Below, piece by piece: positions 427 to 63,966 of a stretch of DNA of 64,000 nucleotides. Position numbers and translations under genes: made by a program. Where the stretch lies: NCBI GenBank assembly GCA_002269645.1, contig NIVC01001913.1, forward strand, positions 158,537-222,536. The letters run 5' to 3'. Within the stretch, counting starts at the first letter, position 1, and the number at the start of each line of letters is the position of its first letter. Source of the DNA: Macrostomum lignano (Eukaryota). The notes below the pieces were generated by a model that did no database searches, was not told the origin of the DNA, and worked only from the letters and a program-made list of their open reading frames with translations.

Positions 427-499
427 GTGAGTTGGGTGGGGTTTCAGTTTCTATAGTCTAAATATTGTATGTTTAATACTCTCGTTGGGTTATTAGAAT

Positions 500-24560: not shown

Positions 24561-25261
24561 AACCAAAGCCAAATTGCAGGCTCATTCCCTGAGGCTTGGA
24601 TTCTCTCCGACTCGAGCCGGGACGTCCGTGCGTGACGGCGCATACGAGGGGGGCTGCGTTGTTGTCCGCTCGTCCCCCTCAGCCTCCCAGGGCACCTACT
24701 TAAACCTGGCCTCATCGCTACTCAGTCAGCTGCTGCCCCCGCACTCCGCACCTCACTCCTGCCACGTTTTGGTTTGGTTGGCTGGGCGGCGTGGGGGCGG
24801 CGGCGAGATGAGTTCATCTCAGGTCAAGCTTTGCCGCGCCTTCTCTTATTCAGCCCTGGATGAGCAGCTGGGGCTGGCCTGGATCGGGAGGGGGCGGTTC
24901 TGCCTGGGGTTTGAGCTTCTGTCCCTCAATCACTTTCCCAATCCTCCCAAGCAGTCGCAGTTGAGATGAGCTCACTTTTCTTACTTTTAAAGAGCTGCCA
25001 TTAAAGCCCCTTTCTCCTTCTCGCCTTAAATTTGCTTTTGCACGCCTCCGTGATACCGCCCGCCTCACACGGAAGCTCTCTAATTACTCTTGCTTTATGA
25101 GGCTTCGGTTCTTCAAGATCTCTTGGATGTCCCAGGCAGTGCTGCATACATTTTGAAAACAGCCATGAGTGGCAAATTGCAGTAGTATACAGTTTTTGCT
25201 AATTTTTTACAATTTTAGCAATGTCCGCGCACCATAGCTACAATGATGCGAAGGAAGAAAA

Positions 25262-26045: not shown

Positions 26046-26745
26046 TGAATGGCACTAACCGAAAAGTACAGAGCAATTTTCAATTTGGCAGTCATGCCGC
26101 CTGCAATGCATGACTGTCGAGAAGCCGCTGCCACAATGCGAATAAAAAGAATTCTTAATTGAACTCTTTGAATCTGGAATATAATCAGATAGCCGGGTAG
26201 TCAGGCCGGCCTCCCACGCTGAAGTCAAGAGTCTTGTCCTTTGTCTTCGCTAATGGACCCAACTGTATCGTTGCATTAGGAAAATTTCATTTTTTTCGCC
26301 TCCGCCCACAAAGTCTTGGATAAAAGCCAAGTCTGCTGACTCTCCACTTCCTTCTTTTAAACCTCCATCTTTGTTGCGACCCAACCCCGTGGCGTCAACG
26401 TTTGCAATTGCGCAGCGCTGGGCGACTTTCTTGTCAATTGGGAATCGGGCCGGCTATAGAGCTGGCCGGCTTTTATCCGCCCCCTGCTATTCCCCTCACC
26501 CCCTCCCCGACCCACCGTATTCAGCACTCCCTACACCCTCCATCACAGCCGTCCCTTCTTCCCCAACCACCAATCCATCCCCAGCGTCCCCTCCCTGGCC
26601 GCCCCTCCCCCCAACCCCGAGTGCCTCGCCAGCACCCCCACCATGGACTATTTTAGCGGCACCGGGGGCGCTCCGCCGCTGCCCCAGCTGTTCTGTTATC
26701 CCGCTGCCTCCGCCCACGCATCCACCACCGCAGCCTGTCAGTCTG

Positions 26746-43089: not shown

Positions 43090-43520
43090 TCAAAAGTGCA
43101 GATAGATCTGGGACATTTGCAGCGGCTCCCACTGGCCCGTGGCGCCGAACCAGCCCATGTACTGGATGTCGCCAATATCGCCATTACGATCGAAAATGCC
43201 GTTGGGATTGGCCTCGCTGCAGTTGTCTCCGGTGCCGAACCACCAGCCGCTGTTGCCGTAAGCCTGCGAGCAGGCCTGGCCTGGCGAGCCCACTGGATAA
43301 TCGAAGGTGGCGAACTCGGCACCTCGGCTGGCCAGCATTGAGTCTCCGAAATTGACGGAGCCCTTTTGGTACTTGGAGTAGTTCATGGCGTACCCTTCAG
43401 TTGGGCCCTTCACGGTGAAGTCGAGGTACTTGCATTTGTAATATTTTCCGTCAATACCGCTCAGAACGGACATCGACACGCTCACATTTCCACTTGTCAG
43501 CTGATGGAGTCTGTCCAGCC
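43090..43520 (-). CDS. Fibrinogen-related (FReD/FBG) domain, last exon
   Basis: Phase-1 acceptor ccgcag|GG; GLDRLHQLT, FGDSM, FATFD, CSQAYGNSGWWF, CSEANPNG, MGW; stop TGA 43092-43090. Confidence 0.9.
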
Positions 43521-43563
43521 CTGCGGCGCGGTGATCGGCCATGCTGAATTGCTGCTACTGAGT

Positions 43564-45742: not shown

Positions 45743-45826
45743 TGGAGTTGTTTTTCGGCGTCCTGCTGCTTCAGCCATTCACGAGTTCAAAGTAAAAAAT
45801 GCATGTACAAGTGTAAACAATGTTAC

Positions 45827-46048
45827 CAGATTTTCGGTACAAGGTGGAATTCTCCGGTAGGTAGTTGAAGCAGCCATCCCGGCTAGTTGACATCTCGCAC
45901 TCCGATGTGGAGTCGTTGAATCGAAACGAGCGGCAGGTCGGACTGGCCAGGCATTTCAACACGCAGTCGGACTTTGAGACGGTGATGGAAGAGGGGGAGT
46001 CCACGCAGGCGCAGGTTGTCTGCGGCACAGCTTCGAAATCGGCCGAGG
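45827..46048 (-). CDS. PAN/apple domain exon of the PAN-FReD protein (5' end of gene unresolved)
   Basis: Acceptor cacttttccgcag|; DCVLKCLASPTCRSFRFNDSTSECEMS (PAN cysteine pattern); phase-1 donor G|GTAACA matches the FReD exon. Confidence 0.78.
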
Positions 46049-46279
46049 CTGCGGAAAAGTGAGCATAGTTTAAATATGCGAATTCGAAGTCGTTAAGCGT
46101 GGAAACGACGGAAAGGCCCACCAATGCTGCTTTACCACAAAAAGTCGATGCCTTTCTTAAGAAACAGAGAAATTCCTAAAGGTAGTTGAAGCAAATTTTA
46201 GTTTTCATTTTTGTTTTTGTTTTAAATTTCTGCTTCAGGATTGGTATATCACAGTCGAGCACATGCACCTGTATTATTC

Positions 46280-48559: not shown

Positions 48560-48750
48560 TTACACCCACCTCAATCCATATCCTAACCCACTAGCCGCGC
48601 TGCGACACCCACCTCACTCCTTTTCCTTACCCACTAGCCGCGCTGCAACACCCACCTCACTCCATATCCTTATCCAGTAGCCGCGTTGCGACACCCACCT
48701 CACTTCTTTTCCTTACCCACTAGCCGCGCTGCGACACCCACCTCACTCCA
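48560..48750. repeat. 43-bp minisatellite, copy 1 (3' of the FERM-SPRY stop codon)
   Basis: Unit CACCCACCTCACTCCATTTTCTAACCCACTAGCCGCGCTGCGA, more diverged than copy 2. Confidence 0.85.
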
Positions 48751-49039
48751 TTTGTCTCACTCGCATCTAGCCATAATATGACATACACTTCATTTTTGCA
48801 GGCTTTTAAATTTACTACACGTTTGAGCTCAAATAATCCTGGCCTTCATTCGCCAAAATACACGAGCTAGTTAGAGTAACCGCAGCCTATATATTACTAA
48901 TCCATAGAAATATAAAAAGGCAGTTGTCAATGGCTGGTCAGAAGTATTCAATGGCTGCAAGAAATGTTTTTGTTAAATATTTCGTAACTAGTGCGACACG
49001 CATTTAGGACCGGACAAAGGGGGAGAGCAAGAACCGCTT

Positions 49040-49174
49040 CTAGATTTCGCTCTCGTGCTTCGGAGGCGATTTCCTGGCATCGATGGTGGACATGCTGAAA
49101 TCGTTTACATTCTCGTCCATGATTTTGTCTTTTCGGCTTAGGCCGGTCTGCTCGAAGATAATGTCATTTAGAAT
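49040..49174 (-). CDS. FERM-SPRY protein, last exon (4.1 C-terminal-domain-like)
   Basis: Acceptor tttttccag|; ILNDIIFEQTGLSRKDKIMDENVNDFSMSTIDARKSPPKHESEI*; phase 0. Confidence 0.72.
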   Translation of the reverse strand: MLNDIIFEQTGLSRKDKIMDENVNDFSMSTIDARKSPPKHESEI

Positions 49175-49429
49175 CTGGAAAAAATGAGTTACAGTGGATG
49201 AGTTTCATTAGAAGTGGAACTAATAAATTAGCTTTCTCAAATCCTTTAAAAAAATCTACCATTCATAGTCATTTAACTAAGTTCATGTAGGTCCCCTTCT
49301 AGACATAGCTCGTAGAAAGACCAATACAAAAGCTATTCATATTGCCTTGGATTCTTACCAATCAGCAATGATTTGATTAAATAAAGACAACAGTCTAGCA
49401 GACATAAAAAGCTTTGCCGCGCAGCGACG

Positions 49430-49730
49430 CCTCCCTCACTCCATTTTCTAACCCACTAGCCGCGCCGCGACACCCACCTTACTCCATTTCCTACACCCAC
49501 TAGCCGCGCTGCGACACCCACCTCACTCCATTTTCTAACCCACTAGCCGCGCTGCGACACCCACCTCACTCCATTTTTTAACCCACTAGCCGCGCTGCAA
49601 TACCCACCTCACTCCATTTTCTAACCCACTAGCCGCGCTGCGACACCCACCTCACTCCATTTTCTAACCCACTAGCCGCGCTGCAATACCCACCTCACTC
49701 CATTTTCTAACCCACTAGCCGCGCGGAGAC
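49430..49730. repeat. 43-bp minisatellite, copy 2 (last intron)
   Basis: Same unit as 48560-48750. Confidence 0.9.
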
Positions 49731-49998
49731 GCTCCACTTTTCTCACCCTCGTCGAGCCACAATCAAGACAGATAAAGAATCCTTAGTCTTGGAGCGAATC
49801 GTGGTGTATTGTGGTGTTATACAGGATAAGAACACATTAAAGAATATTTTGTACTAATCTTAAGATATCTAGAAATTTATTAAGGTCAGTCTGTTAAGCT
49901 ATTCAATCAACAATGAACAGCCTGAAGCCCTGGATTGACCCGCTTGTGAAGGAGGGGTTGAACACGGTTGCCCCACGTATCCGCGCATGAAATCTTAC

Positions 49999-50091
49999 AT
50001 CGTCCTCTTCGCCGCCCTCCTCGTAGATGGCCGGATTGCGCCGGCCTGTGCGAGTCTCCTTGCGGGTCAGCTTGGATGCGCCAGACTTGAT
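49999..50091 (-). CDS. FERM-SPRY protein, 4.1-CTD-like exon
   Basis: cggcag|IKSGASKLTRKETRTGRRNPAIYEEGGEEDD|GTAAGA; phase 0-0; resembles 4.1 VKGG..ETRIEKR..D.D as recalled. Confidence 0.72.
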
Positions 50092-50342
50092 CTGCCGAAT
50101 TGGAGATTTGCGATGAGTTGAAGCCAATTTAAAAAGCTTAATTTCAAGTAAGTTTCAAGGCTCCTTTGTCACCTGGGGTCTGGGCCACCTGATGGATGAC
50201 TCTTATCACCTGGGCCATTTGAAGGCGTTTATCATCACCTGGGCCATTTGGGTCTTATCACCTGCGCCATTTAGAAGGCGGCTTCTATCACCTGAACCCT
50301 TAACCGGACTCACTCACGTTTACAGTATCTTACTGCACTCAC

Positions 50343-50528
50343 CGACTTCTCCAAATGCTCAGACGAGGCGGCGTCGCCTTCCGGCACTGCCGGGCCGCGC
50401 GTCTCAATCACCTTGCTGGTGATCACCTGGCGGGTCTTCTTGCTGCGCACAATCTTCTTCGTGACAGTGTTGCCGTGCTCGTCAACGTACGTCACTATTT
50501 CCTCCTCGGGCTCGCCGACTTGCTCGCT
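50343..50528 (-). CDS. FERM-SPRY protein, exon
   Basis: atcgcag|SEQVGEPEEEIVTYVDEHGNTVTKKIVRSKK...EHLEKS|GTGAGT; phase 0-0. Confidence 0.75.
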
Positions 50529-50566
50529 CTGCGATAGGATGGCAGTGGATTGCTAATCTAGCCAAT

Positions 50567-50730
50567 ACATGGATGCAGAAATAGAATGGATTGCTAATCT
50601 AGCCAATACATGGATGCAGAAATAGAATGGATTGCTAATCTAGCCAATACATGGATGCAGAAATAGAATGGATTGCTAATCTAGCCAATACATGGATGCA
50701 GAAATAGAATGGATTGCTAATCTAGTCAAC
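50567..50730. repeat. 41-bp minisatellite (intronic)
   Basis: Unit GGATTGCTAATCTAGCCAATACATGGATGCAGAAATAGAAT. Confidence 0.9.
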
Positions 50731-51180
50731 ATGGACGAACCGATAGACAGGTTTCTAGCCAATATGGATAAAAAAACAGAATGAGTAAGATAATATGGAA
50801 CATATGCGCCACTACATAACCAGTGACATGCATTTTATCGAATCTCCATTTAGAAAAGGATATTGCTATTTGGTTTACAGCATAATGCACTGGTGTAAAA
50901 AACTTAATGCTTGGTCAAAGGCAGCATGAGAATATCTGAATTGATAGAACTGCCCATTTCTTCCAGTTAAAAATATTGATTAATACTGTCATTTCGTTAA
51001 CTGTAATCTATATCCGTGTTGCAATGGCATACTTAAGTTTATGTTTATGTTTATGGTCATATATCAAAGGCATGCAAAAACATGCATGTCATACTCGTGT
51101 AAACATAAATATTAATAAGAATTTTCTGTTTTATACGTTTTATTTAAAGAAGACTTCAAAATTCACAATCGCCTATTTAC

Positions 51181-51267
51181 AGTAGTGACACTAATCTCCT
51201 CATTCTGCTGCTTCCGAGTCGCATCCGCTTGTTGCTGCTGCCGCTGCGATTCAACTTTTTCAACGTC
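51181..51267 (-). CDS. Candidate symmetric (cassette) exon of the FERM-SPRY gene
   Basis: gaaag|DVEKVESQRQQQQADATRKQQNEEISVTT|GTAAAT; 87 nt; phase 0-0. Confidence 0.45.
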
Positions 51268-51376
51268 CTTTCGGCGAGTATAAAGACAATCATAGTTGAA
51301 CAACAGAATAGCTAACTCAGAACTAACCTTAGTTTTCCTAAATGGAATTTAAATAGGGAAATTCAAAGCAACTGAC

Positions 51377-51520
51377 CTCGGTGCGACTCTCCAGAACCGT
51401 GACCGACTGACCCTCCGAGCCGCCAGCGTTGCCCCTCGGCTTGGGGCTGGGAGCTCGGATCTGGGGCTTGTTCTCCCTGATCATGTCGTATTTCTGGTCA
51501 ACCGCCGGTAGGTTGGAGGC
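51377..51520 (-). CDS. FERM-SPRY protein, exon
   Basis: tgcgcag|ASNLPAVDQKYDMIRENKPQ...LESRTE|GTCAGT; phase 0-0. Confidence 0.72.
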
Positions 51521-51691
51521 CTGCGCAATAGTTGAAAAATTGAGCAAGAAGAGTGAGTAGTGAGCATATTTTAAAAATACAATAGAGTTGGATAAATTAT
51601 TGTGCAGTTCAAAGAAAACAAAGAAAATAAAAAACATAAAAGCATATGTGAAATGAAGTGCTAAAGAAATCATGTGTGTCATAGCCAGTCT

Positions 51692-52335
51692 TGGGGGTAA
51701 GGAAATGGAGTGGGGTGGGTGTCTCAGCGAGGCTTGGGCGGAGTGAGGTGTTTGTTAAAGCGAGTCGAGGGGTAAGGAAATGGAGTGGGGTGGGTGTCTC
51801 AGCGAGGCTTGGGCGGAGTGAGGTGTTTGTTAAAGCGAGTCGAGGGGTAAGGAAATGGAGTGGGGTGGGTGTCTCAGCGAGGCTTGGGCGGAGTGAGGTG
51901 TTTGTTAAAGCGAGTCGAGGGGTAAGGAAATGGAGTGGGGTGGGTGTCTCAGCGAGGCTTGGGGGGAGTGAGGTGTTTGTTAAAGCGAGTCGAGGGGTAA
52001 GGAAATGGAGTGGGGTGGGTGTCTCAGCGAGGCTTGGGGGAGTGAGGTGTTTGTTAAAGCGAGTCGAGGGGTAAGGAAATGGAGTGGGGTGGGTGTCTCA
52101 GCGAGGCTTGGGGGGAGTGAGGTGTTTGTTAAAGCGAGTCGAGGGGTAAGGAAATGGAGTGGGGTGGGTGTCTCAGCGAGGCTTGGGGGGAGTGAGGTGT
52201 TTGTTAAAGCGAGTCGAGGGGTAAGGAAATGGAGTGGGGTGGGTGTCTCAGCGAGGCTTGGGGGGAGTGAGGTGTTTGTTAAAGCGAGTCGAGGGGTCAG
52301 GAAATGGAGTGGGGTGGGTGTCATAGCGAGCCTTG
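51692..52335. repeat. 75-bp minisatellite (intronic, ~8.5 copies)
   Basis: Unit begins GGGGTAAGGAAATGGAGTGGGGTGGGTGTCTCAGCGAGGCTTGGG... Confidence 0.93.
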
Positions 52336-52836
52336 GAAGTGAGGAAGTTACCTTACATAAAGGTGGGTTGGTGTTTCAGCGAGACTTGAGTAGGGAAATG
52401 GTGTTGGATCAGGCTAGTTCACCACTAGTTAGCAGTGTGCGTGTTCGATTAATCAATCACTAAATCATTTTTTCTGTAGTTTTCTTTGAGCTTTCTTGAT
52501 TTTCTTTACGAGCTAACCAGTGCCTGTTTGCATGTATACTGTTACTGTGTTTTTTCTATGCTTGCACCAACTAGTGGAAAAAATGTGGAAATAGTTTCAT
52601 TACAAGCTAGCATAAGAGGCAACGATTGGCATGCAGGGGGACAAAAGGCGGCGACAAGGATAAATATTTGATAAAATGGAAACCGATGTCGAGCTTGAAG
52701 CCAATAAGCTATAATTCCAGACGTACTCCGAGTAGAAAACAGTAAAGCAACCGAAAAGAAAGTGCAACAATTATTAAGCATGCAGTTCTTTGCTGCGATT
52801 TAGAAAGGAGTCTAAAAAGCAATTCGCGCCCCAAAC

Positions 52837-52905
52837 CCGTTTGGCGAGGCTGTCCCGGATCGAGTTCGGTTCGGCGTATTTGAAGCCTCGTTTTTTTGGC
52901 TTGCG
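52837..52905 (-). CDS. Candidate symmetric (cassette) exon with a basic NLS-like motif
   Basis: gattttccag|RKPKKRGFKYAEPNSIRDSLAKR|GTTTGG; 69 nt; phase 0-0. Confidence 0.45.
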
Positions 52906-53104
52906 CTGGAAAATCGTTATGCCATTGAGTGAATTGTGAACTCGTCCCCTAGCTTGAATCAAATTAATATTGAACTGCTTGCGAGATCAATGTTATGCTT
53001 CTGCTCTAATACGAGTTACGGGCGTAGTCACGTTTTCTTCATTGGATCGCTTCTGTGAGGTGCATCTTTAGGGCGCAATCATTGGGGAGGGGGTGTCATC
53101 GATG

Positions 53105-53260
53105 AGGCTAGCACCAGAGCCAGAGGCGCCAGCAGCACCAGTGGCGCCAGCAGCACTAGGCGCGCCAGCAGCACCAGTAGCGCCAGCAGCACCAGGGGCG
53201 CCAGCACCTCCAGTGGCGCCAGCAGCACTAGGCGCGCCAGCAGCACCAGGGGCGCCACAG
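53105..53260. repeat. Short GC-rich tandem repeat (GCGCCAGCAGCACCA...)
   Basis: Direct reading. Confidence 0.8.
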
Positions 53261-53391
53261 CTACTGTAAAGGGGGCGCCCCAGATTTTGTCAGCCTATTA
53301 AAAGAGGGGGTGCCGTCCCCTGCCCCTCTCTAGCTACGCCGGCCCCTGCTATGAGCGAGAATGCAAGAAAATGATGTTGCATCATCCGAAC

Positions 53392-53886
53392 CTCCATAAT
53401 GCCGGCCCTGCTACTCGGCTGGATGGAAGACTCGGGCGCCAGGCAGACAGGCGTCCAGTCCGGACCAGGTGGATAACGGAACGGCCGCTGTCCAAGATTC
53501 ACGTCCAACGTCTGGTCTCGCATGGCAACAGTTGGAAAGAAGGACTCGCGCTCGAGCATGTCCTGCTGCAGACTGTAGGCCGGTCCGAACGGCTGGCCGT
53601 TCTTAGCGAACTGCAGTTCGCCATTGTTGAAATCGAAAAAGCAGCCAATGACGTCGCCTTTGGCGTAGGGCTCGCCGTAGGCTTCGATCTCGTCGTCGAA
53701 TAGCTTCTTGCCCTGGTTGCCGGCCAGGCCGAAGCCTTCGTGGTCGGCGCCGTAGCCCCAGCCGTTGGCGTCGCGCCCGACGTCCAGCAAGCCGGACTCG
53801 GTGGTCCAGCCGACACGGCCGAGGCCGCCGGACTCCAGGGGCTCCGCCTCCCAGTAGAACCGGCCGCCCTCGCTGCCTTTCAGGCC
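53392..53886 (-). CDS. FERM-SPRY protein, SPRY domain 2 (DDX1-type)
   Basis: cttccag|GLKGSEGGRFYWE...GRVGW...LDVGRD..GWGYG...GKK...YGEPY..GDVIGCFFD..NG.L.FAKNG...FFPTVAM...NLG..PFRYPPG...IME|GTTCGG; 165 codons; phase 0-0. Confidence 0.88.
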
Positions 53887-54136
53887 CTGGAAGTGTTGGT
53901 GTTGCAGCGACTTTCTTAGTCATCTATTCAACTCGTTTACTGTTCTCTCTTAGTCTAGTTCAATCTGGTTCTCTCTCTCTCTTGCGCAGCTTTCTGATTG
54001 GCTCTTTAATTTTATCCCCTTTCTCAGTCCCGCACTCCACCCCCTCCTTTCTTATCTACGCCGAACCCGTAATTGATTTTAAACAAATAAACTTGTTTTG
54101 GGCCAAGTGCCTTAGGCACTGCCTGGGTTTTTAATC

Positions 54137-54602
54137 TTAGGCAGCCGCTACTTCCAATGGATTCTTCCACAGGCAGCCGCTACTTCCAATGGATTCTTCC
54201 ACAGGCAGCCGCTACTTCCAATGGATTCTTCCACAGGCAGCCGCTACTTCCAATGGATTCTTCCACAGGCAGCCGCTACTTCCAATGGATTCTTCCACAG
54301 GCAACCGCTACTTCCAATGGATTCTTCCACAGGCAGCCGCTCCTTCCAATGGATTCTTCCACAGGCAGCCGCTCCTTCCAATGGATTCTTCCACAGGCAG
54401 CCGCTACTTCCAATGGATTCTTCCACAGGCAGCCGCTACTTCCAATGGATTCTTCCACAGGCAGCCGCTACTTCCAATGGATTCTTCCACAGGCAACCGC
54501 TACTTCCAGTGGATTCTTCCACAAACAGCCGCTACTTCCAGTGGATTATTCCACAGGCAACCGCTACTTCCAATGGATTCTTCCACAGACAGCCGCTACT
54601 CC
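54137..54602. repeat. 32-bp minisatellite (intronic)
   Basis: Unit GGCAGCCGCTACTTCCAATGGATTCTTCCACA. Confidence 0.93.
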
Positions 54603-54648
54603 CAAAGGATACAGAAGCGCACACATTATCACAGGAAGCTGTACTCAC

Positions 54649-55185
54649 CTTGTTGGCCCGAACGCCCTGCCAACCAAAGCCCAGCTGGCCCTGCGCGGAC
54701 AGCTGGTCGGGTCCCAGTTGCAGGCCCGGCCCGCTGGTGTCGTGCGGGTTCAACCGCCAGCTGCGTGGATTGTCCAAAGTTTGGTTGGCGAGCGCCAGGC
54801 CCACCGGACGCCAGGCTCCGCCGGGTGGATAGGCGAGCGGTCTGGACGGATCGTCGCCAAAGTTCCAGTCAGCTGCGGCGCCGTCGCGAAGGCAGGCGGC
54901 CGGATAAACAGCCTGCGGGCCGCCGGAGGGACCGTCGCCACCACGGGACTTCCTGTTACCGCCAGCAGTGCCTGTCGGAGTAAAGAAGTCGGCTGGCAGC
55001 TGGTGCGCGGGCCCTAGCTCTTTGCCGTTGACCGCGTAGGTGACGGTGCCGTTGTCGAGGTCCAGGTAGGCGCCGACTATGTCACCAGTCATCAGCTGGA
55101 CACCGTATTGCTCGGAGACTCCATCTAGCATCTTCTGGGCGTGTCGGCCGGCCGGGTCGGTGCCAAAACCGCAGCCGTGGTTGTC
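54649..55185 (-). CDS. FERM-SPRY protein, second half of SPRY 1 and start of SPRY 2
   Basis: gcccccag|DNHGCGFG...YG...GDIVGAYLDLDNG...NGKELG...YPAACL...NFG...YPPG...WRLNPHD...GWQGVRANK|GTGAGT; 179 codons. Confidence 0.88.
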
Positions 55186-55227
55186 CTGGGGGCGGGGAAG
55201 GAACGCACTGGCTGATTTTCTATTATC

Positions 55228-55520
55228 AACTCTGCTCTACACCTCTCCACTCTGCTCTACACCTCTCCACTCTGCTCTACACCTCTCCACTCTGCTCTAC
55301 ACCTCTCCACTCTGCTCTACACCTCTCCACTCTGCTCTACACCTCTCCACTCTGCTCTACACCTCTCCACTCTGCTCTACACCTCTCCACTCCTATCTAC
55401 ACCTCTCCGCTCCTATCTACACCTCTCCGCTCCTATCTACACCTCTCCGCTCCTATCTACACCTCTCCGCTCCTATCTACACCTCTCCGCTCCTATCTAC
55501 ACCTCTCCGCTCCTATCTAC
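55228..55520. repeat. 20-bp minisatellite (intronic)
   Basis: Unit CTCTGCTCTACACCTCTCCA, later CTCCTATCTACACCTCTCCG. Confidence 0.93.
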
Positions 55521-55591
55521 GAGTACATCCCTCCACACCCTTGTAGTCCCCTAATTGGTTCCTCTCATCCCATCCTGGCTGCTCGTCTCAC

Positions 55592-56025
55592 CCGTCCGAG
55601 GTTGAGATCGGCGTTGCCGTCCGCCCAGCCGACCCGCGCCTCCACCGGCTGGTCGGAGGGCCCGTCTCCCCGCACAGCGGTCTCGTAGTACCACTTGCCG
55701 CCAGCCGAGGCCCGGATGCCGCGGTCCGCCCGGCAGCCCTGCCAGTCGCGAACCCCGGCCGGGCAGGCGCCGGCGCAGCGCACGGGGTCCATGCCAGCGG
55801 CCAGGTAGGGGTCGGCGTCTGATGGATTCATCTGCCAGCGAATCGGCCTGTCAACGTCCAGCTCGGGCCGGCGGTCGTACTGCTCTCGTCGGTTCACCGG
55901 CGGCAGCAGCGGCGCGCCCATGCTGGCGCCCTGTCGGTTGGACATCGCGTAGGTGTCGTCGTTGGTCAAGCCCGAGGTGCCAGCGCCGCCGGCGCCCGTT
56001 CGAGCCTCACGGTTGTAGGCGTCGT
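55592..56025 (-). CDS. FERM-SPRY protein, linker and first half of SPRY 1
   Basis: cgcgcag|AC (phase 1) ...WQMNPSD...WQGCRADRG...GGKWYYET...ARVGWA...LNLGR|GTGAGA; matches the DDX1 SPRY start (WQMNPYD..WHGCRA..GKHYYE..RVGW) as recalled. Confidence 0.85.
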
Positions 56026-56151
56026 CTGCGCGAATGATGATTTGAAAATGTTTTGATTTTGTTTTAACAATTTTAATAGAAACTGTTTGAGACAGTTAGA
56101 CTAAAGTTCATTAATTAGTCCCTGGATATCCGAACGCCGAACTCATTGACC

Positions 56152-56511
56152 TTATTATTATTTTTATTAGAGGCAGGGGGTTGTGTGCACCCTGGCGCAA
56201 TTTAAGCGTCATTGGCACACAACCGGCGAGAGGCATTACTGCCCATTCCGCCGACTCCCCTGAGCAGGCATACAAGCGCGCGGATACGTACGCAGGCACA
56301 CACTCACACAGGAGTGTACAGCGGCCCTAACTTTATCAATTGTTAGGCATGTACACTTCACTGCGCCTTAAGGGGTTGGCTCTCAAGGCCGTTAATTGCA
56401 CAAGCGAGCCAAGCAAGATTCCAATCCAGCCCAAATTAATGTGGCTGCACTTGGAATCGAGCCTGGGTCGCGGCACACCAGAGCAGCTGCGCTACCGCTG
56501 GGCTACGGCCC
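56152..56511 (-). mobile_element. tRNA-derived SINE, near full length (~360 bp)
   Basis: Head GGGCCGTAGCCCAGCGGTAG (A box) ... GGCTCGATTCC (B box); central block shared with the 34.6 kb copy; A-rich (AAT)n tail; candidate 8-bp target-site duplication TTGACCTT at 56146-56153 and 56513-56520. Confidence 0.75.
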
Positions 56512-56624
56512 TTTGACCTTTCTTTCTTAAAGATTTCGCACCGAGTTGACCTCGGCTGACCTTTTCGTTTTTCCTTTGGTCCATTCCGCACTACGTGACC
56601 TTAGTTAAACCCTTTGCGTCCCGC

Positions 56625-56940
56625 ACTTGTGTGACCTCAATCGACCCCTGTTCTCCTCAGTCCCGCATTTGTGTGACCTCAATCGACCCCTGTTCTCCTC
56701 AGTCCCGCATTTTTGTGACCTCAATCGACCCCTGTTCTCCTCAGTCCCGCACTGTGTGACCTCAATCGACCCCTGTTCTCCTCAGTCCCGCACTGTGTGA
56801 CCTCAATCGACCCCTGTTCTCCTCAGTCCCGCACTGTGTGACCTCAATCGACCCCTGTTCTCCTCAGTCCCGCACTGTGTGACCTCAATCGACCCCTGTT
56901 CTCCTCAGTCCCGCACTGTGTGACCTCAATCGACCCCTCC
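56625..56940. repeat. 41-bp minisatellite (intronic)
   Basis: Unit TGTGTGACCTCAATCGACCCCTGTTCTCCTCAGTCCCGCAC. Confidence 0.93.
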
Positions 56941-57744
56941 CTTACTAAACTGCTTGATATATTGCAGAGAATCACAGGCTGAAAGTGCATCAATCGGATT
57001 TGTAATAGCGTAGTTGCCTAAGCTGAAAATTATAAGCACGGTAGTCAGGCGTTTCTTACAAAGAATTCATCGCACAAATAGCAGGCTGTGGAATACTCGT
57101 ATGCTTCTATCGCAACCGCAATAAATTTTCAATGGGCATTAATAAATTATTCGTCTACTGAAGCAAGCAGATCTTAATATTATAGAAGTTAAATGCATGC
57201 CACATCAAATATTTAAATGACAATTAAAGTGACCAGTTTGTACTTCTATTTCTCCTTTATTGTAAAGAATCATAGACCTTTGAACAGAGCATCTGGACTA
57301 TACAGTCCAGACGTTCGCACTACTGGCTTGAATTGTATTGCCCAAATTGATATTATGCCACACCGCCAATGCGAGTGTGTTAGACAGAAAAAAGCATTAA
57401 ATTACCAGAGTTAGGCATTGGTTAGCAATATCCAAATATATTACAAATTTTTCTACAAATCTACAAATTTTTTAAATTAAAAACTATCAACAGACCGTCG
57501 AATCCTTCGTCTACTTTAGCTTTTGTAGGGCCGCCTGCAGTGAAATTAAAAGTGCATTGCAATAATAATAGTACAATTGTGTGGATGTGCCAGCGATTCA
57601 CTGGGCCTGCTGATGAAAGTTAATTAATAAATAGTGCTTTTAAAGTACGTAAAGAACTTTTTAAATCGATGCTTTTAACGTTACACATGCTATTTAGAAA
57701 TTACTTGTTAGTTACTAGAATTAGACTATATGCATAGTGCTGAT

Positions 57745-59075
57745 GGCTGACACCCTGGCTCTCTGACACCCTGGCTCTGACACCCTGGCTCTCTGACACC
57801 CTGGCTCTGACACCCTGGCTCTCTGACACCCTGGCTCTCTGACACCCTGGCTCTTTGACACCCTGGCTCCCTGACACCCTGGCTCTCTGACACCCTGGCT
57901 CTTTGACACCCTGGCTCCCTGACACCCTGGCTCTCTGACACCCTGGCTCTCTGACACCCTGGCTCTGACACCCTGGCTCTCTGACACCCTGGCTCTCTGA
58001 CACCCTGGCTCTTTGACACCCTGGCTCCCTGACACCCTGGCTCTCTGACACCCTGGCTCTGACACCCTGGCTCTCTGACACCCTGGCTCTGACACCCTGG
58101 CTCTCTGACACCCTGGCTCTGACACCCTGGCTCTCTGACACCCTGGCTCTCTGACACCCTGGCTCTTTGACACCCTGGCTCCCTGACACCCTGGCTCTCT
58201 GACACCCTGGCTCTGACACCCTGGCTCTCTGACACCCTGGCTCTCTGACACCCTGGCTCTTTGACACCCTGGCTCCCTGACACCCTGGCTCTCTGACACC
58301 CTGGCTCTGACACCCTGGCTCTCTGACACCGTGGTTCTCTGACACCCTGGCTCTGACACCCTGGCTCTCTGACACCCTGGCTCCCTGACACCCTGGCTCT
58401 CTGACACCCTGGCTCTGACACCCTAGCTCTCTGACACCCTGGCTCTGACACCCTGGCTCTGACACCCTGGTTCTCTGACACCCTGGCTCTCTGACACCCT
58501 GGCTCTCTGACACCCTGGCTCTGACACCCTGGCTCTCTGACACCCTGGCTCTCTGACACCCTGGCTCTTTGACACCCTGGCTCCCTGACACCCTGGCTCT
58601 GACACCCTAGCTCTCTGACACCCTGGCTCTGACACCCTGGCTCTGACACCCTGGCTCTCTGACACCCTGGCTCTCTGACACCCTGGCTCTCTGACACCCT
58701 GGCTCTGACACCCTAGCTCTCTGACACCCTGGCTCTGACACCCTGGCTCTGACACCCTGGCTCTGACACCCTGGCTCTCTGACACCCTGGCTCTCTGACA
58801 CCCTGGCTCTCTGACACCCTGGCTCCCTGACACCCTGGCTCTGACACCCTGGCTCTCTGACACCCTGGCTCTCTGACACCCTGGCTCTTTGACACCCTGG
58901 CTCTCTGACACCCTGGCTCTGACACCCTGGCTCTGACACCCTGGCTCTCTGACACCCTGGCTCCCTGACACCCTGGCTCTGACACCCTGGCTCTCTGACA
59001 CCCTGGCTCCCTGACACCCTGGCTCCCTGGCACCCTGGCTCTCTGACACTCTAGCTCTCTGACACCCCGGCTCTG
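57745..59075. repeat. 14/16-bp mixed minisatellite (intronic)
   Basis: CCCTGGCTCT(CT)GACA. Confidence 0.95.
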
Positions 59076-59205
59076 ATGCTCTGCCAATCCAACTCTAAAG
59101 TAGCTAGCTGCCTTGTCAGAAAGATTACCATGTATTTGCTTGATGGTCAGCGTAGGAGCTAAAAATGCGACAGATATGAACATCGGCAAAAGCAGCAATG
59201 CGTAC

Positions 59206-59358
59206 CCTTCTTCTTGAAGCTCTTGCGCATGCCAGGGGTAACTTGCACCTCCTGGTAGGCGCCCGACTGGTCGTTCTGCGAGTCCCGGATGCCGGTGCCC
59301 ACTTGCCCTTGAAGGTGCCGGGAATGTGCGGCTTCTGCGGTTCTCGGCGGACTTCAAT
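59206..59358 (-). CDS. FERM-SPRY protein, post-FERM linker exon (reading phase conflict)
   Basis: Acceptor cctcag|A gives FFR-LKSAE (phase 2), but the best donor G|GTACGC needs the +1 frame (...MRKSFKKK) to join the next exon. A 1-nt indel or an alternative donor is implied. Confidence 0.55.
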
Positions 59359-59542
59359 CTGAGGATCATTCAATTTTGCTAACATTATTTGCTACTTGCT
59401 TACTATAAGTAGGTTAAATGCGTTTGCAACTCGAAAACAAAAATACCATTAGAAGATTAAATCAATAATTGAATTGTTTCTAAAAAAAGAGTTATATAAA
59501 TAGACTAGTAGGAACTTTTGTTCATGAGCACAATAAGCTAAC

Positions 59543-59970
59543 CTGAAGAATCCGTGATGCTCAACCACAGCCCGCCAGAGTCGCTTAGCCAGCTTCGATG
59601 AGGCGCACTTGAACTCAAACAGAGTCTCCGACTTGGGGTCGCGCTCGTTATCCCCGGTGCGAATCGACACCTTGAGCGTGCTGCCCTTGTAGGACACTTT
59701 GAGAATCTTCGGCCAGGAGAAGCGGTTAATCCGGAGGTTGTTGCGGTACACCAGAACGCCGCCGTGGTAAACTCCAAGGAGGACCTCCTCGCCAGAGGCG
59801 TCCTTAGACTCGTGCAAATCGACGCCGTACATGGCGAGCTTCTTGGCGTTCCGCAGGAAGTGCAGGTCGGCCTCCTCCGGAGTCATGCGCTGGTGCGTGC
59901 GGTGCAGCTCGCTGACTCGCTCGGCCAGCTCGGCGTTGTTTCGGTACTCCTCCGGACAGAACGGGCAGTC
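59543..59970 (-). CDS. Protein 4.1/coracle-family FERM domain (end of F2 lobe and F3 lobe)
   Basis: ELHRTHQRMTPEEADLHFLRNAKKLAMYGVDLH, RINRFSWPKILKVSYKG, FKCASSKLAKRLWRAVVEHHGFFR; acceptor gcccag|GAC, donor AG|GTTAGC. Confidence 0.93.
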
Positions 59971-60339
59971 CTGGGCGGCGAAGTTTAAACTAGGAAAATC
60001 AATTGCCAACTCTTTCCATCTTGAGAGGGATAATACCGGATAAATGGGGATATTCTAGATCAGGGGTTGGCGAAGCCTCTCTATCCGGCCATTGGGTCCT
60101 CGGAAACTTCACGATAGCAATCCGGTCTGCCAGGGTTTGTGTCTCTTCTCAGCTGTCTTCTCTCAAATATCTGTCCCGCAGTCATCCGCTATGTTCTCTA
60201 CCTGACCCCTGTTCTAGATCCTTATTGAGCCTTTGTTTATTGACATGTCGAGGTACTACATGAGCTGTAGCAATTCGATAAAAAGTCAATCAAGCGAGCC
60301 CTGACTTTCTCATCGTCAGCTCTGCGCTTACAGACTTAC

Positions 60340-60572
60340 ATTCAAGTACATCAGCGAGTTCATCTTCTCGTCCAACGGATCGAAATCGCCAACTTCAGAC
60401 TGCAGCACGTAGCTGCCCAGGATGATGTAGGTGATGAAACTGCAAGGCAGCAGCTCGGCCATGAGGTTCTGCCGAATCTGCAGCGCCATGTAGTAGCGGG
60501 TGAGATTCTCCCGCAGATTCTCCGGGTCGGGCGGGTAGAACTTCACCATGAACTCCAGCTTCCACTCGTTCT
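60340..60572 (-). CDS. Protein 4.1/coracle-family FERM domain (F1/F2 junction exon; upstream exons not found in the window)
   Basis: WKLEFMVKFYPPDP.NL.ENLTRYYMALQIRQ.L....LPCSF.T..ILGSY.LQSEVGDFDP; acceptor tttccgccag|, donor AAT|GTAAGT. Confidence 0.93.
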
Positions 60573-60654
60573 CTGGCGGAAACAAATTTGAGAAAAAGAG
60601 ATATCGAATCAACTGGAATGCTTGATGACATAGTGTGGGTCTTAACTCGTGGGT

Positions 60655-61295
60655 CCTGCTGCTACCCTCCGTGATACTTCAGTGCCCCTGCTGCTACCCT
60701 CCGTGCTACTTCAGTGCCCCTGCTGCTACCCTCCGTGATACTTCAGTGCCCCTGCAGCAATACTTTCCGTGATACTTCAGTGCCCCTGCAGCAATACTTT
60801 CCGTGATACTTCAGTGCCCCTGCAGCAATACTTTCCGTGATACTTCAGTGCCCCTGCAGCAATACTTTCCGTGATACTTCAGTGCCCCTGCAGCAATACT
60901 TTCCGTGATACTTCAGTGCCCCTGCAGCAATACCCTCCGTGATACTTCAGTGCCCCTGCAGCAATACCCTCTGAGCTACTTCAGTGCCCCTGCAGCAATA
61001 CCCTTCGTGATACTTCAGTGCCCCTGCAGCAATACCTCCCGTGATACTTCAGTGCCCCTGCAGCAATACCTTCCGTGATACTTCAGTGCCCCTGCAGCAA
61101 TATCCTCCGTGATACTTCAGTGCCCCTGCAGCAATACCTTCCGTGATACTTCAGTGCCCCTGCAGCAATACCCTCTGAGCTACTTCAGTGCCCTGCAGCA
61201 ATACCCTCCGTGCTACTTCAGTGCCCCTGCAGAAATACCCTCCTGCGTGCTACTTCAGTGCCCCTGCAGCAATACCCTCCGTGCTACTTCAGCAC
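60655..61295. repeat. ~34-bp minisatellite
   Basis: Unit TGATACTTCAGTGCCCCTGCAGCAATACTTTCCG. Confidence 0.92.
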
Positions 61296-62264
61296 CTTGC
61301 AACTACCCCTCCAGTACGCAGTTAGGCTTGAAACAAAGTTGTCTAGTAAGCAACATGCCTCATTCGAATAAAGCCATCTATAGCATACGAAGGTCGCAGA
61401 TGAAACATATATAGCGGTGGAAATTGTCGAAAATAGGCTTATAGAAATTCTAAACTGTTTGGTCAAAGATTTGCTTATAAGATTTGGCCAGGAGAAGAAG
61501 TGCCCTTACCGACGCTTTAATTTAAAGCCCTTGCTTGTGTGTCTTATGTTCCATGCTTCAATTATAGGTTTCCTGACTTTTGTAGCGGTCTGACTAGCTG
61601 TTTCAGGCAACTATTAGAGAATGTAAGCAAACCGCATGGCCTAGTGATCTCTTTACCAAAATCTTGCAGTAATGCTTAACTGAAATAAAAATTTGGGGCT
61701 TGTGATAGCAATTTACCGAAATTTCTTTTCCATGGCTGAAGCAATGATACCCATATTCAGAAAGTGGAAGCAGACAGCTTAAGGCTGACTGCAGCCAAAC
61801 CAAAATTATGAGATACAACAAGCAGCCTGAATATGTCTGCCAGCAGCCTCCGCCCAAGGCCTTAGTCACCACTTCGCGTACGACTTGTGGAACGCACACA
61901 AAGGGCGGTGGGGGGTAGACAGTGACTAAATACCCCCCCCCCACACATCAAGCCTCTTCTCTCAGACACGGCTTCAGAATTTTTTTGTGCTGTGTGCCAG
62001 GCCGTTGACTAAAGCTGCTCCGACGGCTGCCGGGGCTCTGCTGGCCGCGGGTTTGTCACTAAACTGCGCAGAAGCTGACTCGAATAGTTTCTTATTTTGC
62101 ATTTAGCTATTTAGCTCGTAGTAACCGTCACTTATTAGTTGAACAGTCATAATCAGCAATTAGAATGGCATTGTGGGAAAATAAATCTGCTTAATACAAA
62201 GAAAGAATCTGTTAAAAACAGCCGTGAAAAAAAGTGTGGTGAATGAGACACTAAGTATTGCGAA

Positions 62265-63966
62265 TGAAATAGTTGACATGAGCAATGAACAGTTGGCATG
62301 AGCAATGAACAGTTGGCATGAGGAATGAACAGTTGGCATGAGGAATGAACAGTTGGCATGAGGAATGAACAGTTGGCATGAGGAATGAACAGTTGATAAT
62401 GATGAATGAACAGTTGGCAATGATGAATGAACAGTTGGCAATGATGAATGAACAGTTGGCATGAGGAATGAACAGTTGATAATGATGAATGAACAGTTGG
62501 CAATGATGAATGAACAGTTGGCATGAGGAATGAACAGTTGATAATGATGAATGAACAGTTGATAATGATGAATGAACAGTTGATAATGATGAATGAACAG
62601 TTGATAATGATGAATGAACAGTTGGCAATGATGAATGAACAGTTGATAATGAGGAATGAACAGTTGGCAATGATGAATGAACAGTTGATAATGATGAATG
62701 AACAGTTGATAATGATGAATGAACAGTTGATAATGATGAATGAACAGTTGATAATGATGAATGAACAGTTGGCAATGATGAATGAACAGTTGATAATGAG
62801 GAATGAACAGTTGGCAATGATGAATGAACAGTTGGCAATGATGAATGAACAGTTGATAATGATGAATGAACAGTTGATAATGATGAATGAACAGTTGATA
62901 ATGAGGAATGAACAGTTGATAATGATGAATGAACAGTTGATAATGATGAATGAACTGTTGGCAATGATGAATGAACAGTTGATAATGATGAATGAACTGT
63001 TGATAATGATGAATGAACTGTTGGCAATGATGAATGAACAGTTGATAATGATGAATGAACAGTTGATAATGATGAATGAACAGTTGATAATGATGAATGA
63101 ACAGTTGATAATGATGAATGAACTGTTGGCAATGATGAATGAACAGTTGATAATGATGAATGAACTGTTGATAATGATGAATGAACAGTTGATAATGATG
63201 AATGAACAGTTGATAATGATGAATGAACAGTTGGCAATGATGAATGAACAGTTGATAATGATGAATGAACTGTTGGCAATGATGAATGAACAGTTGATAA
63301 TGATGAATGAACAGTTGATAATGATGAATGAACAGTTGATAATGAGGAATGAACAGTTGATAATGATGAATGAACAGTTGATAATGATGAATGAACTGTT
63401 GGCAATGATGAATGAACAGTTGATAATGATGAATGAACTGTTGATAATGATGAATGAACAGTTGATAATGATGAATGAACAGTTGATAATGATGAATGAA
63501 CAGTTGCAATGATGAATGAACAGTTGATAATGATGAATGAACTGTTGGCAATGATGAATGAACAGTTGATAATGATGAATGAACAGTTGATAATGATGAA
63601 TGAACAGTTGATAATGATGAATGAACAGTTGATAATGATGAATGAACAGTTGATAATGATGAATGAACAGTTTGCAATGATGAATGAACAGTTGATAATG
63701 ATGAATGAACAGTTGATAATGATGAATGAACAGTTGATAATGATGAATGAACTGTTGGCAATGATGAATGAACAGTTGATAATGATGAATGAACAGTTGA
63801 TAATGATGAATGAACAGTTGATAATGATGAATGAACAGTTGATAATGATGAATGAACTGTTGATAATGATGAATGAACCGTTGATAATGATGAATGAACA
63901 GTTGATAATGATGAATGAACCGTTGATAATGATGAATGAACAGTTGATAATGATGAATGAACAGTT
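62265..63966. repeat. 20/21-bp minisatellite
   Basis: GAGGAATGAACAGTTGGCAT, then AATGAACAGTTGATAATGATG. Confidence 0.95.

What the first reader, a model, noticed from the sequence alone, without database searches (positions are those of the whole stretch)
49040..60572. Protein-4.1/coracle-like gene carrying two tandem DDX1-type SPRY domains (FERM - SPRY - SPRY - 4.1-CTD)
Seen in sequence: ten minus-strand exons with canonical splice sites, in order FERM (60572-60340, 59970-59543), linker (59358-59206), SPRY1/SPRY2 (56025-55592, 55185-54649, 53886-53392), then 51520-51377, 50528-50343, 50091-49999 and 49174-49040. From SPRY1 to the stop every junction is in phase (about 945 codons visible in total). 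Established knowledge: the FERM motifs are 4.1/coracle type; 4.1 proteins end in a CTD like the last exons here; WQMNP.D/W.GCRA/GK.YYE/RVGW is the SPRY subtype of the DEAD-box helicase DDX1; I know of no SPRY domain in canonical 4.1 proteins. Inference: a DDX1-like SPRY was recruited and duplicated between FERM and CTD, giving a membrane-cytoskeleton or junction adaptor with extra interaction modules. The SPRY block enters in phase 1 and leaves in phase 0, so it cannot be cleanly skipped.
Basis: partly seen in the sequence, partly recalled or inferred. Interest (0 to 1): 0.85.

Follow-up and report, generated by a model that had tools for sequence, protein, structure and literature searches.

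The report
Flatworm protein-4.1 gene with two SPRY domains
This is a real gene for a membrane-skeleton adaptor of the protein 4.1 family that carries two extra protein-binding (SPRY) modules of the type found in the RNA helicase DDX1; the same design is present, unnamed or misnamed, in many flatworm genomes but nobody seems to have described it.

Summary
All ten minus-strand exons exist with AG/GT borders and open frames. They encode FERM_M and FERM_C of the protein-4.1 subtype, then two SPRY domains whose closest solved relative, by sequence and by fold, is the DDX1 SPRY. The tail is conserved.

Three corrections are needed:
- A 39-nt micro-exon (57534-57496) lies between the linker exon and SPRY1.
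- The linker exon (59358-59206) is two bases short of the open frame. As assembled, the frame stops in the micro-exon. This is probably two assembly indels, less likely a recent lesion.
- The "4.1-CTD" is not found by Pfam. Profile-profile comparison recovers only a divergent core motif of about 40 residues.

The single-gene reading is strongly supported. An uninterrupted 1088-aa ORF on 3.5-kb transcript-like contigs from a related species is 80% identical and colinear with all 11 exons. The FERM-SPRY-SPRY design also occurs in Macrostomum, trematodes, cestodes and a monogenean, and in no other phylum among the top hits of an exhaustive search.

The architecture is therefore already in databases, partly mislabelled "DDX1". 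I found no paper describing it. It is a flatworm-specific variant of protein 4.1, of moderate interest. The biochemical role of the SPRY pair is inferred, not shown.

The parts
60340..60572 (-). Exon A: start of FERM_M (lobe B). First exon visible in the window; FERM_N and the start codon lie beyond 64000.
   Evidence: AG/GT borders and open frame. Pfam FERM_M. 92% aa identity to P0005 residues 134-210.
59543..59970 (-). Exon B: rest of FERM_M plus FERM_C, ending ...VVEHHGFF.
   Evidence: 80% aa identity to P0005 residues 211-362.
59206..59358 (-). Exon C: FA-like linker (RLKSAE-K-PQKPHIPGTFKGKWA-P-GIRDSQNDQSGAYQEVQVTPGMRKSFKKK). It is two bases short (about 59341/59340 and about 59296-59293), so three reading frames are used in turn.
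   Evidence: Nucleotide alignment to cDNA L001 shows two 1-nt gaps. The corrected reading matches P0005 and M. lignano P0012 and the start of the canonical 4.1 FA region (hhalign). As assembled it gives a premature stop.
57496..57534 (-). Exon D: new 39-nt micro-exon (G-GPTKAKVDEGFD-D), phase 1 in and phase 1 out.
   Evidence: tblastn of P0005 residues 406-417. CAG|GC...ACG|GTCTGT borders and match to cDNA 1345-1383.
55592..56025 (-). Exon E: low-complexity linker and first half of SPRY1 (RWQMNPSDAD..., WQGCRADRG, KWYYE, RVGWA).
   Evidence: 79% aa identity to P0005.
54649..55185 (-). Exon F: second half of SPRY1, with a disordered Gly-rich insert, and start of SPRY2 (SWRLNPHD..., WQGVRANK).
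   Evidence: 81% aa identity to P0005. AF2 pLDDT is below 50 only in the insert, residues 165-181 of the block.
53392..53886 (-). Exon G: core and end of SPRY2.
   Evidence: 81% aa identity to P0005.
51377..51520 (-). Exon H: tail linker (NLPAVDQKYDMIRENKPQI...).
   Evidence: Conserved in P0005 and M. lignano P0004.
50343..50528 (-). Exon I: conserved tail motif GEPEEEIVTYVDEHGNTVTKKIVRSKKTRQVITSKVIE.
   Evidence: 83% aa identity to P0005. The same motif occurs in M. lignano, Cichlidogyrus and Mesocestoides proteins.
49999..50091 (-). Exon J: first half of the 4.1-CTD-like core (KETRTGRRNPAIYEEGGEEDD).
   Evidence: hhalign to an alignment of 94 canonical 4.1 CTDs: probability 86-91%, P about 1e-6 to 5e-6.
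49040..49174 (-). Exon K: second half of the CTD-like core (ILNDIIFEQTGLSRKD...) and stop codon TAG at 49042-49040.
   Evidence: 80% aa identity to the C-terminus of P0005, which ends at the same residue.

Best explanation
The window holds the 3' eleven exons of the orthologue of a flatworm-specific member of the protein 4.1 / coracle family. The start of the gene lies outside the window.

Shown: one mRNA encodes a 4.1-type FERM domain, a short FA-like linker, two tandem DDX1-type SPRY domains and a tail. The tail keeps a degenerate copy of the 4.1 C-terminal-domain core.

Shown or inferred from trees: a DDX1-like SPRY unit entered the variable middle of an ancestral 4.1 gene, where vertebrate 4.1 has its spectrin-actin-binding region. 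It was duplicated before Macrostomorpha and Neodermata split and has been kept under purifying selection since.

Inferred mechanism: the FERM domain docks the protein on the cytoplasmic tails of membrane proteins and on the inner leaflet, as in 4.1 and coracle. The two SPRY domains, predicted to form one rigid two-domain unit, act as added protein-binding platforms. The CTD-like motif keeps one ancestral partner site. This would make a cortical or junctional scaffold with extra clients.

The two missing bases in the linker exon are most likely assembly errors.
For: Gene model:
- Exons, splice sites and frames are confirmed.
- All 11 exons are colinear and contiguous with cDNA-like contig L001.

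One transcript:
- P0005 is a 1088-aa uninterrupted ORF on 3.5-kb Logan contigs from two runs (SRR28338163 and SRR28338164). It is 80% identical over query residues 1-943 in a single stretch.
- A 1105-aa member of the Dicrocoelium cluster also sits on a 3975-nt Logan contig.

Domains:
- Pfam finds FERM_M, FERM_C and two SPRY domains; orthologues add FERM_N.
- The FERM is closest to 4.1R and 4.1B (5e-72) and to named band-4.1 proteins of molluscs, arthropods and vertebrates at 50-55% identity.
- Both SPRYs are closest to the DDX1 SPRY by sequence.
- They are also closest by predicted fold: AF2 pLDDT 86.8 and pTM 0.81; Foldseek top hit 4xw3, E 3.5e-21, TM 0.91-0.93, rmsd 1.5 A.

Family and history:
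- FERM plus two SPRYs occur in one protein in Dicrocoelium, Echinostoma, Clonorchis, Mesocestoides (two paralogues), Schistocephalus and Cichlidogyrus. Fragmentary Macrostomum and Paragonimus models join the end of FERM to SPRY.
- SPRY1 and SPRY2 clades are each monophyletic.
- Substitutions against the relative's cDNA fall 101/69/304 on codon positions 1/2/3.

Tail and linker:
- CTD-like core: hhalign probability 86-91%.
- FA-like start.

Literature: the DDX1 SPRY has been proposed as a protein-protein interaction platform (PMC4555926).
Against: - As assembled, the linker exon is out of frame and the FERM reading frame ends in the micro-exon.
- No transcript data exist for this species itself.
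- Pfam detects no FA, SAB or 4_1_CTD in this protein or in any orthologue, so the tail is only weakly 4.1-like.
- No binding partner, localisation or phenotype is known for any family member.
- The adaptor mechanism rests entirely on what FERM and SPRY domains do elsewhere.
That they are cDNA is inferred from the absence of all ten introns.
Confidence: 0.8

Rival explanations
1. The copy in this window is a recently inactivated pseudogene or null allele of the FERM-SPRY gene. The two 1-nt deletions in the linker exon are real and the mRNA ends in the micro-exon.
For: There are two 1-nt gaps relative to cDNA L001 within about 50 nt. A premature TAA appears in exon D when the exons are read as assembled.
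Against: - All other exons (about 2.7 kb) are open and show a third-position substitution bias.
- The three frame segments of exon C each still match P0005 and M. lignano P0012 at protein level, so any lesion must be very recent.
- Indels of single bases are a common fault of long-read assemblies (general knowledge).
Confidence: 0.13
2. The frameshift is real but bypassed. An internal donor CAA|GTGGGC (exon end at 59303) joins to the micro-exon and gives an open frame, producing an isoform that lacks 33 residues of the linker.
For: The spliced product with this donor is open all the way to the normal stop codon.
Against: - The skipped part is conserved in protein sequence in P0005 and in M. 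lignano.
- The donor is only moderately good.
- No transcript supports it.
- An in-frame result has a one-in-three chance of arising by accident.
Confidence: 0.04
3. Two neighbouring genes, a short 4.1-like FERM gene and a separate SPRY-SPRY gene, are wrongly merged.
For: - Some database models contain only the SPRY part: M. lignano P0001 and S. japonicum P0276.
- The assembled frame breaks between FERM and SPRY.
Against: - Uninterrupted full-length ORFs lie on transcript-like contigs from two runs and in the Dicrocoelium cluster.
- FERM and SPRY are joined in seven or more independent gene models.
- The linker and micro-exon are conserved.
- The SPRY-only models start mid-sequence without an initiator Met (P0001 begins AAATAS...).
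Confidence: 0.02
4. It is a fragment or derivative of the DEAD-box helicase DDX1, as NCBI names the Clonorchis, Cichlidogyrus and S. japonicum proteins.
For: The best non-family matches of the SPRY units are DDX1.
Against: Pfam finds no DEAD or Helicase_C domain in the window protein or in the full-length orthologues. The flanks are FERM and a 4.1-like tail.
Confidence: 0.01

Closest known systems
Protein 4.1 / band 4.1-like (EPB41, EPB41L1-3) and Drosophila Coracle
   Same: - The FERM domain is 50-55% identical to named 4.1 proteins, and its best PDB matches are 4.1B and 4.1R.
- It has the HHxFFRL end and the start of the FA region.
- The C-terminal core motif ETR...I.G(D/E).D.D..L..AI.E...P is recognisable by profile-profile comparison.
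- The overall order is FERM, variable middle, C-terminal tail.
   Different: - Two SPRY domains (about 430 residues) occupy the middle.
- There is no SAB.
- FA and CTD fall below Pfam detection.
- The tail is much shorter and more divergent.
SPRY domain of the DEAD-box helicase DDX1 (PDB 4xw3; PMC4555926)
   Same: - Same SPRY subtype, including the N-terminal WQMNPxD extension.
- 35-43% identity.
- Phmmer E-values of 7e-23 and 1.3e-29.
- Predicted fold superposes at TM 0.91-0.93, rmsd 1.5 A.
   Different: - It is not inserted in a RecA-like helicase core.
- It is present twice in tandem.
- SPRY1 carries a disordered Gly-rich insert.
- Whether the conserved basic patch of DDX1 is kept was not tested.
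Unnamed flatworm database proteins. Full FERM + two-SPRY models: E. caproni A0A183A9Y8, M. corti A0A158QTF4 and A0A0R3U4P0, S. solidus A0A183SNI9, D. dendriticum CAH8602423.1, C. sinensis GAA30691.2 ('DDX1, partial'), C. casuarinus KAL3319268.1 ('DEAD box helicase 1, partial'). Partial models: M. lignano A0A1I8JP83, S. japonicum 'DDX1' (P0276).
   Same: The full models share the FERM-SPRY-SPRY(-tail) architecture. They are orthologues or paralogues at 35-57% identity in the SPRY block. The window groups with Macrostomum.
   Different: - They are only automatic annotations, and several models are truncated or frameshifted. The M. lignano model stops within SPRY1, and the S. japonicum model has SPRY domains only.
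- Neodermatans have two paralogue groups.
- The parasite tails differ.

Membership tests
Protein 4.1 family (EPB41 / coracle) | FERM domain of the 4.1 subtype | tested here: met
   Pfam FERM_M and FERM_C. PDB 4.1B and 4.1R score 5e-72, against FARP 1e-41 and ERM 1e-19. The nearest named proteins are band 4.1 / 4.1-like. FERM_N is seen only in orthologue P0005 and lies outside the window.
Protein 4.1 family (EPB41 / coracle) | FERM-adjacent (FA) region after HHxFFRL | tested here: inconclusive
   No Pfam FA (PF08736) hit in the window protein or the orthologues. hhalign aligns the first 26 residues with canonical FA starts (probability 97.7%), but that stretch includes the FERM end.
Protein 4.1 family (EPB41 / coracle) | Spectrin-actin-binding (SAB) domain | tested here: not met
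   No Pfam SAB hit. From my own knowledge, SAB is a vertebrate feature that invertebrate coracle also lacks, so this does not exclude 4.1 ancestry.
Protein 4.1 family (EPB41 / coracle) | C-terminal domain (4_1_CTD) | tested here: inconclusive
   No Pfam hit at E<=10. A local HMM built from 94 canonical CTDs gives E=1.2 for the window tail but 4e-4 for the Dicrocoelium orthologue. hhalign of the family tail against the CTD alignment gives probability 86-91% and P 1e-6 to 5e-6 over 37-43 columns.
DDX1 (DEAD-box helicase 1) | SPRY domain of the DDX1 subtype | tested here: met
DDX1 (DEAD-box helicase 1) | SPRY inserted in a DEAD-box helicase core (DEAD and Helicase_C domains) | tested here: not met
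   Pfam finds no helicase domain in the window protein or in the full-length orthologues. It is therefore not a DDX1.
Flatworm FERM-SPRY-SPRY proteins (unnamed family) | Colinear full-length similarity: FERM, linker, SPRY1, SPRY2, tail | tested here: met
   P0005 is 80% identical in a single stretch over all 943 query residues. All exons map in order. SPRY1 and SPRY2 fall in the respective orthologue clades.
Flatworm FERM-SPRY-SPRY proteins (unnamed family) | Intact reading frame in this genome | tested here: not met
   Exon C is 2 nt short, giving a premature stop as assembled. This is probably an assembly artefact, which cannot be tested here without reads.

The most novel reading that the evidence does not exclude
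Flatworms may have no canonical 4.1/coracle. Their only 4.1 orthologue(s) would then be this SPRY-bearing form, created once by capture and duplication of a DDX1 SPRY. The design would be a synapomorphy at phylum level or of Rhabditophora. It would rewire the junction and tegument cortex to a set of SPRY clients, and it would be a parasite protein architecture absent from vertebrate hosts.
Probability: 0.4. Interest if true: 0.6.

Novelty: new variant of a known kind. Interest (0 to 1): 0.42.

Why it matters
Protein 4.1 and coracle organise membrane domains and septate junctions. A lineage in which that scaffold permanently carries two DDX1-type SPRY modules is a clear case of domain capture. 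It offers a handle on what the poorly understood DDX1 SPRY surface binds.

The family spans free-living and parasitic flatworms (flukes, tapeworms, monogeneans) and was not seen in other phyla. It could therefore mark flatworm-specific cortex or tegument biology.

On the practical side, several public entries named "DDX1" are misannotated members of this family. The gene model here also needs a micro-exon and a check of two missing bases.

Tried and rejected
- **Full-length word-index search.** The search with the 943-aa model timed out. Shorter queries and an alignment query returned only a handful of flatworm proteins, so that index is too insensitive to map the distribution.
- **Domain searches on the tail and linker.** Pfam at E<=10 found nothing for the tail or for either reading of the linker. 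A PDB sequence search of the tail gave only chance hits to designed 'Pizza' proteins.
- **Hidden exons.** I looked for further coding exons between 59.2 and 56.0 kb by six-frame ORFs. The micro-exon sat unnoticed inside a 52-aa ORF in that list; it was only recognised once the orthologue was available.
- **Start of the gene.** No match to P0005 residues 1-133 or cDNA 1-532 exists anywhere in the window, so the 5' part of the gene cannot be described.
- **Organism of the relative.** Searching the literature for the SRA run numbers found nothing.
- **Prior description.** Literature searches for FERM+SPRY fusions found nothing relevant.
- **DDX1 fragment.** I considered and rejected this reading because there is no helicase domain.
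- **Canonical flatworm 4.1.** I did not establish whether flatworms also keep a canonical 4.1. The best FERM-only hits that I looked up were molluscs, arthropods, an echinoderm and agnathans.

Full report
**1. The observation**

I extracted the ten minus-strand exons of the finding and translated them.
- Every exon is preceded by AG and followed by GT. The last ends in TAG at 49042-49040.
- Each has one long open frame.
- From 56025 to the stop, the concatenated exons read as a single open frame.

Pfam gives the following:
- FERM_M (1.9e-21) and FERM_C (5.6e-23) in exons 60572-60340 and 59970-59543.
- Two SPRY domains (2.8e-31) in exons 56025-53392.

The features are therefore real and far beyond chance.

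The SPRY exons sum to 1466 nt, which is not a multiple of three.

**2. Domain subtypes**

*FERM.* Against all PDB sequences, the FERM part matches:

| Match | E-value |
|---|---|
| band 4.1-like 3 and erythroid 4.1R | 5e-72 |
| FARP1/2 | about 1e-41 |
| PTPN3 | 7e-31 |
| merlin / ERM | about 1e-19 |

Named relatives in the large protein collection are band 4.1, 4.1-like and coracle-type proteins of molluscs, arthropods, echinoderms and vertebrates, at 50-55% identity.

*SPRY.* Each SPRY unit on its own hits the DDX1 SPRY crystal structure 4xw3 best. SPRY1 scores 7e-23 and SPRY2 scores 1.3e-29. The next family (ryanodine receptor, RanBP9/10, ASH2L) is at 1e-10 or worse. The match includes the N-terminal WQMNPxD extension.

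An AlphaFold2 model of the 437-residue SPRY block, built on an 11-sequence family alignment, has mean pLDDT 86.8 and pTM 0.81. Only a Gly-rich insert in SPRY1 is disordered. Its top Foldseek match in the PDB is again 4xw3: E 3.5e-21, TM 0.91-0.93 on the target, rmsd 1.5 A.

The '4.1-type FERM' and 'DDX1-type SPRY' statements are confirmed.

**3. One gene or two**

An exhaustive phmmer search of 1.84 billion representative proteins with the spliced model returned P0005. P0005 is 1088 aa and 80% identical. It matches query residues 1-943 as a single stretch onto its residues 135-1088.

P0005 is encoded as an uninterrupted ORF on 3.5-kb contigs assembled from two sequencing runs, SRR28338163 and SRR28338164 (Pfam FERM_N, FERM_M, FERM_C, SPRY). 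The window's orthologue has ten introns in the same stretch. These contigs must therefore be transcripts of a related species (an inference).

tblastn and blastn place the cDNA on the window exon by exon, in order and without leftover cDNA between exon A and the stop.

The next best hits also combine FERM and two SPRYs in one protein:
- Dicrocoelium dendriticum (one cluster member lies on a 3975-nt Logan contig)
- Echinostoma caproni
- Mesocestoides corti (two paralogues)
- Schistocephalus solidus
- Cichlidogyrus casuarinus
- Clonorchis sinensis

Fragmentary models from Macrostomum lignano and Paragonimus kellicotti join the end of FERM to SPRY. Schistosome entries appear with an alignment query.

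All other proteins in the top 150 match through FERM only. Any protein with this FERM plus two such SPRYs would outrank them. Within this collection the architecture is therefore seen only in Platyhelminthes.

**4. Corrections to the gene model**

(a) P0005 residues 406-417 map to 57532-57497. The sequence there is CAG|GC GGC CCT ACA AAA GCT AAA GTA GAC GAA GGA TTC GAC G|GTCTGT. This is a 39-nt exon (57534-57496) that enters and leaves in phase 1 and matches cDNA 1345-1383.

(b) Exon C (59358-59206) is 153 nt where the cDNA has 155. One base is missing at about 59341/59340 (GAGAA^CCG) and one at about 59296-59293 (GCACC^GGC).

- With two placeholder bases it reads RLKSAE-x-PQKPHIPGTFKGKWA-P-GIRDSQNDQSGAYQEVQVTPGMRKSFKKK.
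- That reading matches P0005 (RLKSAEKPQKPHIPGTFKGRYATGMRGQQNDQSGAYPEVQVTSDMRKSFKKK) and M. lignano P0012.
- The 11-exon model then gives a 958-codon open frame.
- As assembled, the FERM frame instead runs into TAA in the micro-exon.

Substitutions between the window and the relative's cDNA fall 101/69/304 on codon positions 1/2/3 over all exons, exon C included. I therefore read the two gaps as assembly indels or a very recent lesion.

An internal donor at 59303 would also restore the frame, but nothing supports its use.

(c) FERM_N and the start codon are not in the window.

**5. The tail**

Pfam finds no 4_1_CTD, FA or SAB in the window protein, even at E<=10, nor in seven orthologues. PDB sequences give nothing.

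I collected the CTDs of 94 canonical 4.1 proteins among the hits and built an HMM.
- It hits the Dicrocoelium tail motif ADRALNAAIFETTRFNPHISV weakly (E 4e-4 in a set of 23).
- It hits the Mesocestoides motif weakly.
- It does not hit the window tail (E 1.2).

Profile-profile comparison of an alignment of flatworm tails with the canonical CTD alignment gives probability 86-91% and P 1e-6 to 5e-6. It aligns KETRTGRRNPAIYEEGGEEDDILNDIIFEQTGLSRKD with ETRVEKKIxIxGDxDiDHDqALAxAIqEAtxmnPDm.

The tail is best called a degenerate 4.1 CTD core. Likewise, only the first part of the FA region is recognisable.

**6. History**

A neighbour-joining tree of SPRY units from nine flatworm proteins plus the window, rooted on human DDX1, puts all SPRY1 units in one clade and all SPRY2 units in another.
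- The window sits next to the Logan relative and Macrostomum lignano.
- SPRY1 and SPRY2 are 37% identical to each other and 35-37% identical to DDX1.
- The tandem duplication therefore predates the split of Macrostomorpha and Neodermata.
- Neodermatans show two paralogue groups.

The window thus most likely comes from a free-living flatworm nearer to Macrostomum than to the parasites (an inference).

**7. Mechanism**

What is shown: the architecture, its conservation under purifying selection, and its expression as one mRNA in relatives.

What is inferred from established knowledge of the families:
- 4.1-type FERM domains dock on the cytoplasmic tails of membrane proteins and on phosphoinositides.
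- In invertebrates, coracle works at septate junctions.
- SPRY domains are protein-binding modules. For DDX1, a conserved basic patch has been proposed as the interaction platform (PMC4555926).

The most likely function is therefore a cortical or junctional scaffold whose middle part recruits additional proteins through a rigid SPRY tandem. No experiment on any family member was found.

**8. Novelty**

Literature searches for FERM with SPRY and band 4.1, DDX1 or flatworm terms found no description.

The sequences are, however, already in UniProt and NCBI with automatic names. Three of these are wrongly called DDX1.

I rate it a new variant of a known kind (protein 4.1) and of moderate interest. 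Domain capture is common, but this case is old, constitutive, apparently phylum-restricted and unstudied.

Noticed in passing
window 48562-63966 (introns and 3' flank of the gene): Most introns of the gene (eight of the ten within the window), its 3' flank and the intron upstream of exon A each hold a minisatellite array. Examples: 62262-63966 (21/42-nt unit, about 80 copies), 57747-59074 (16-nt unit, 86 copies), 60663-61292, 56618-56938, 55229-55512, 54139-54610, 51694-52336 and 50546-50729. The same 43-nt unit lies on both sides of the last exon (49416-49724 and 48562-48753).
   Followed up: partly
window about 8500-24700: About 14-16 kb of strand-asymmetric short-unit satellite with GC skew about +0.75. 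It creates artefactual ORFs of up to 2260 aa ('ETEIES...', 'RQRLRV...').
   Followed up: no
window 26371-28071 (+): A single-exon ORF of 566 aa with a rhodopsin-family GPCR domain (7tm_1, 7.5e-18). It sits in a GC-rich island (64% GC).
   Followed up: partly
window 43090-43542 (-) and 45771-46124 (-): An exon encoding a fibrinogen C-terminal globular domain (2.2e-12), with an upstream exon encoding a PAN/apple domain (2.6e-7). They may belong to one gene, just downstream of the 4.1-like gene on the same strand.
   Followed up: partly
window 24-461 (+): An ORF cut by the window start that looks by eye like the exonuclease domain of a REX/RNA exonuclease. It has no Pfam hit at 1e-3.
   Followed up: partly
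database proteins P0010, P0011, P0276 (not in the window): NCBI names the Cichlidogyrus casuarinus, Clonorchis sinensis and Schistosoma japonicum members of this family 'DDX1' or 'DEAD box helicase 1'. P0010 was scanned with Pfam and has FERM and SPRY domains only, with no helicase domain. P0276's precomputed Pfam annotation lists SPRY only. P0011 was not scanned. The names are probably annotation errors carried over from best-hit naming.
   Followed up: partly
window 59290-59345 (-): Two single-base gaps lie within about 50 nt of one exon, while about 2.7 kb of the other coding sequence is clean. If these are assembly errors, they may point to locally poor polishing next to the 1.3-kb 16-nt minisatellite at 57747-59074.
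   Followed up: partly
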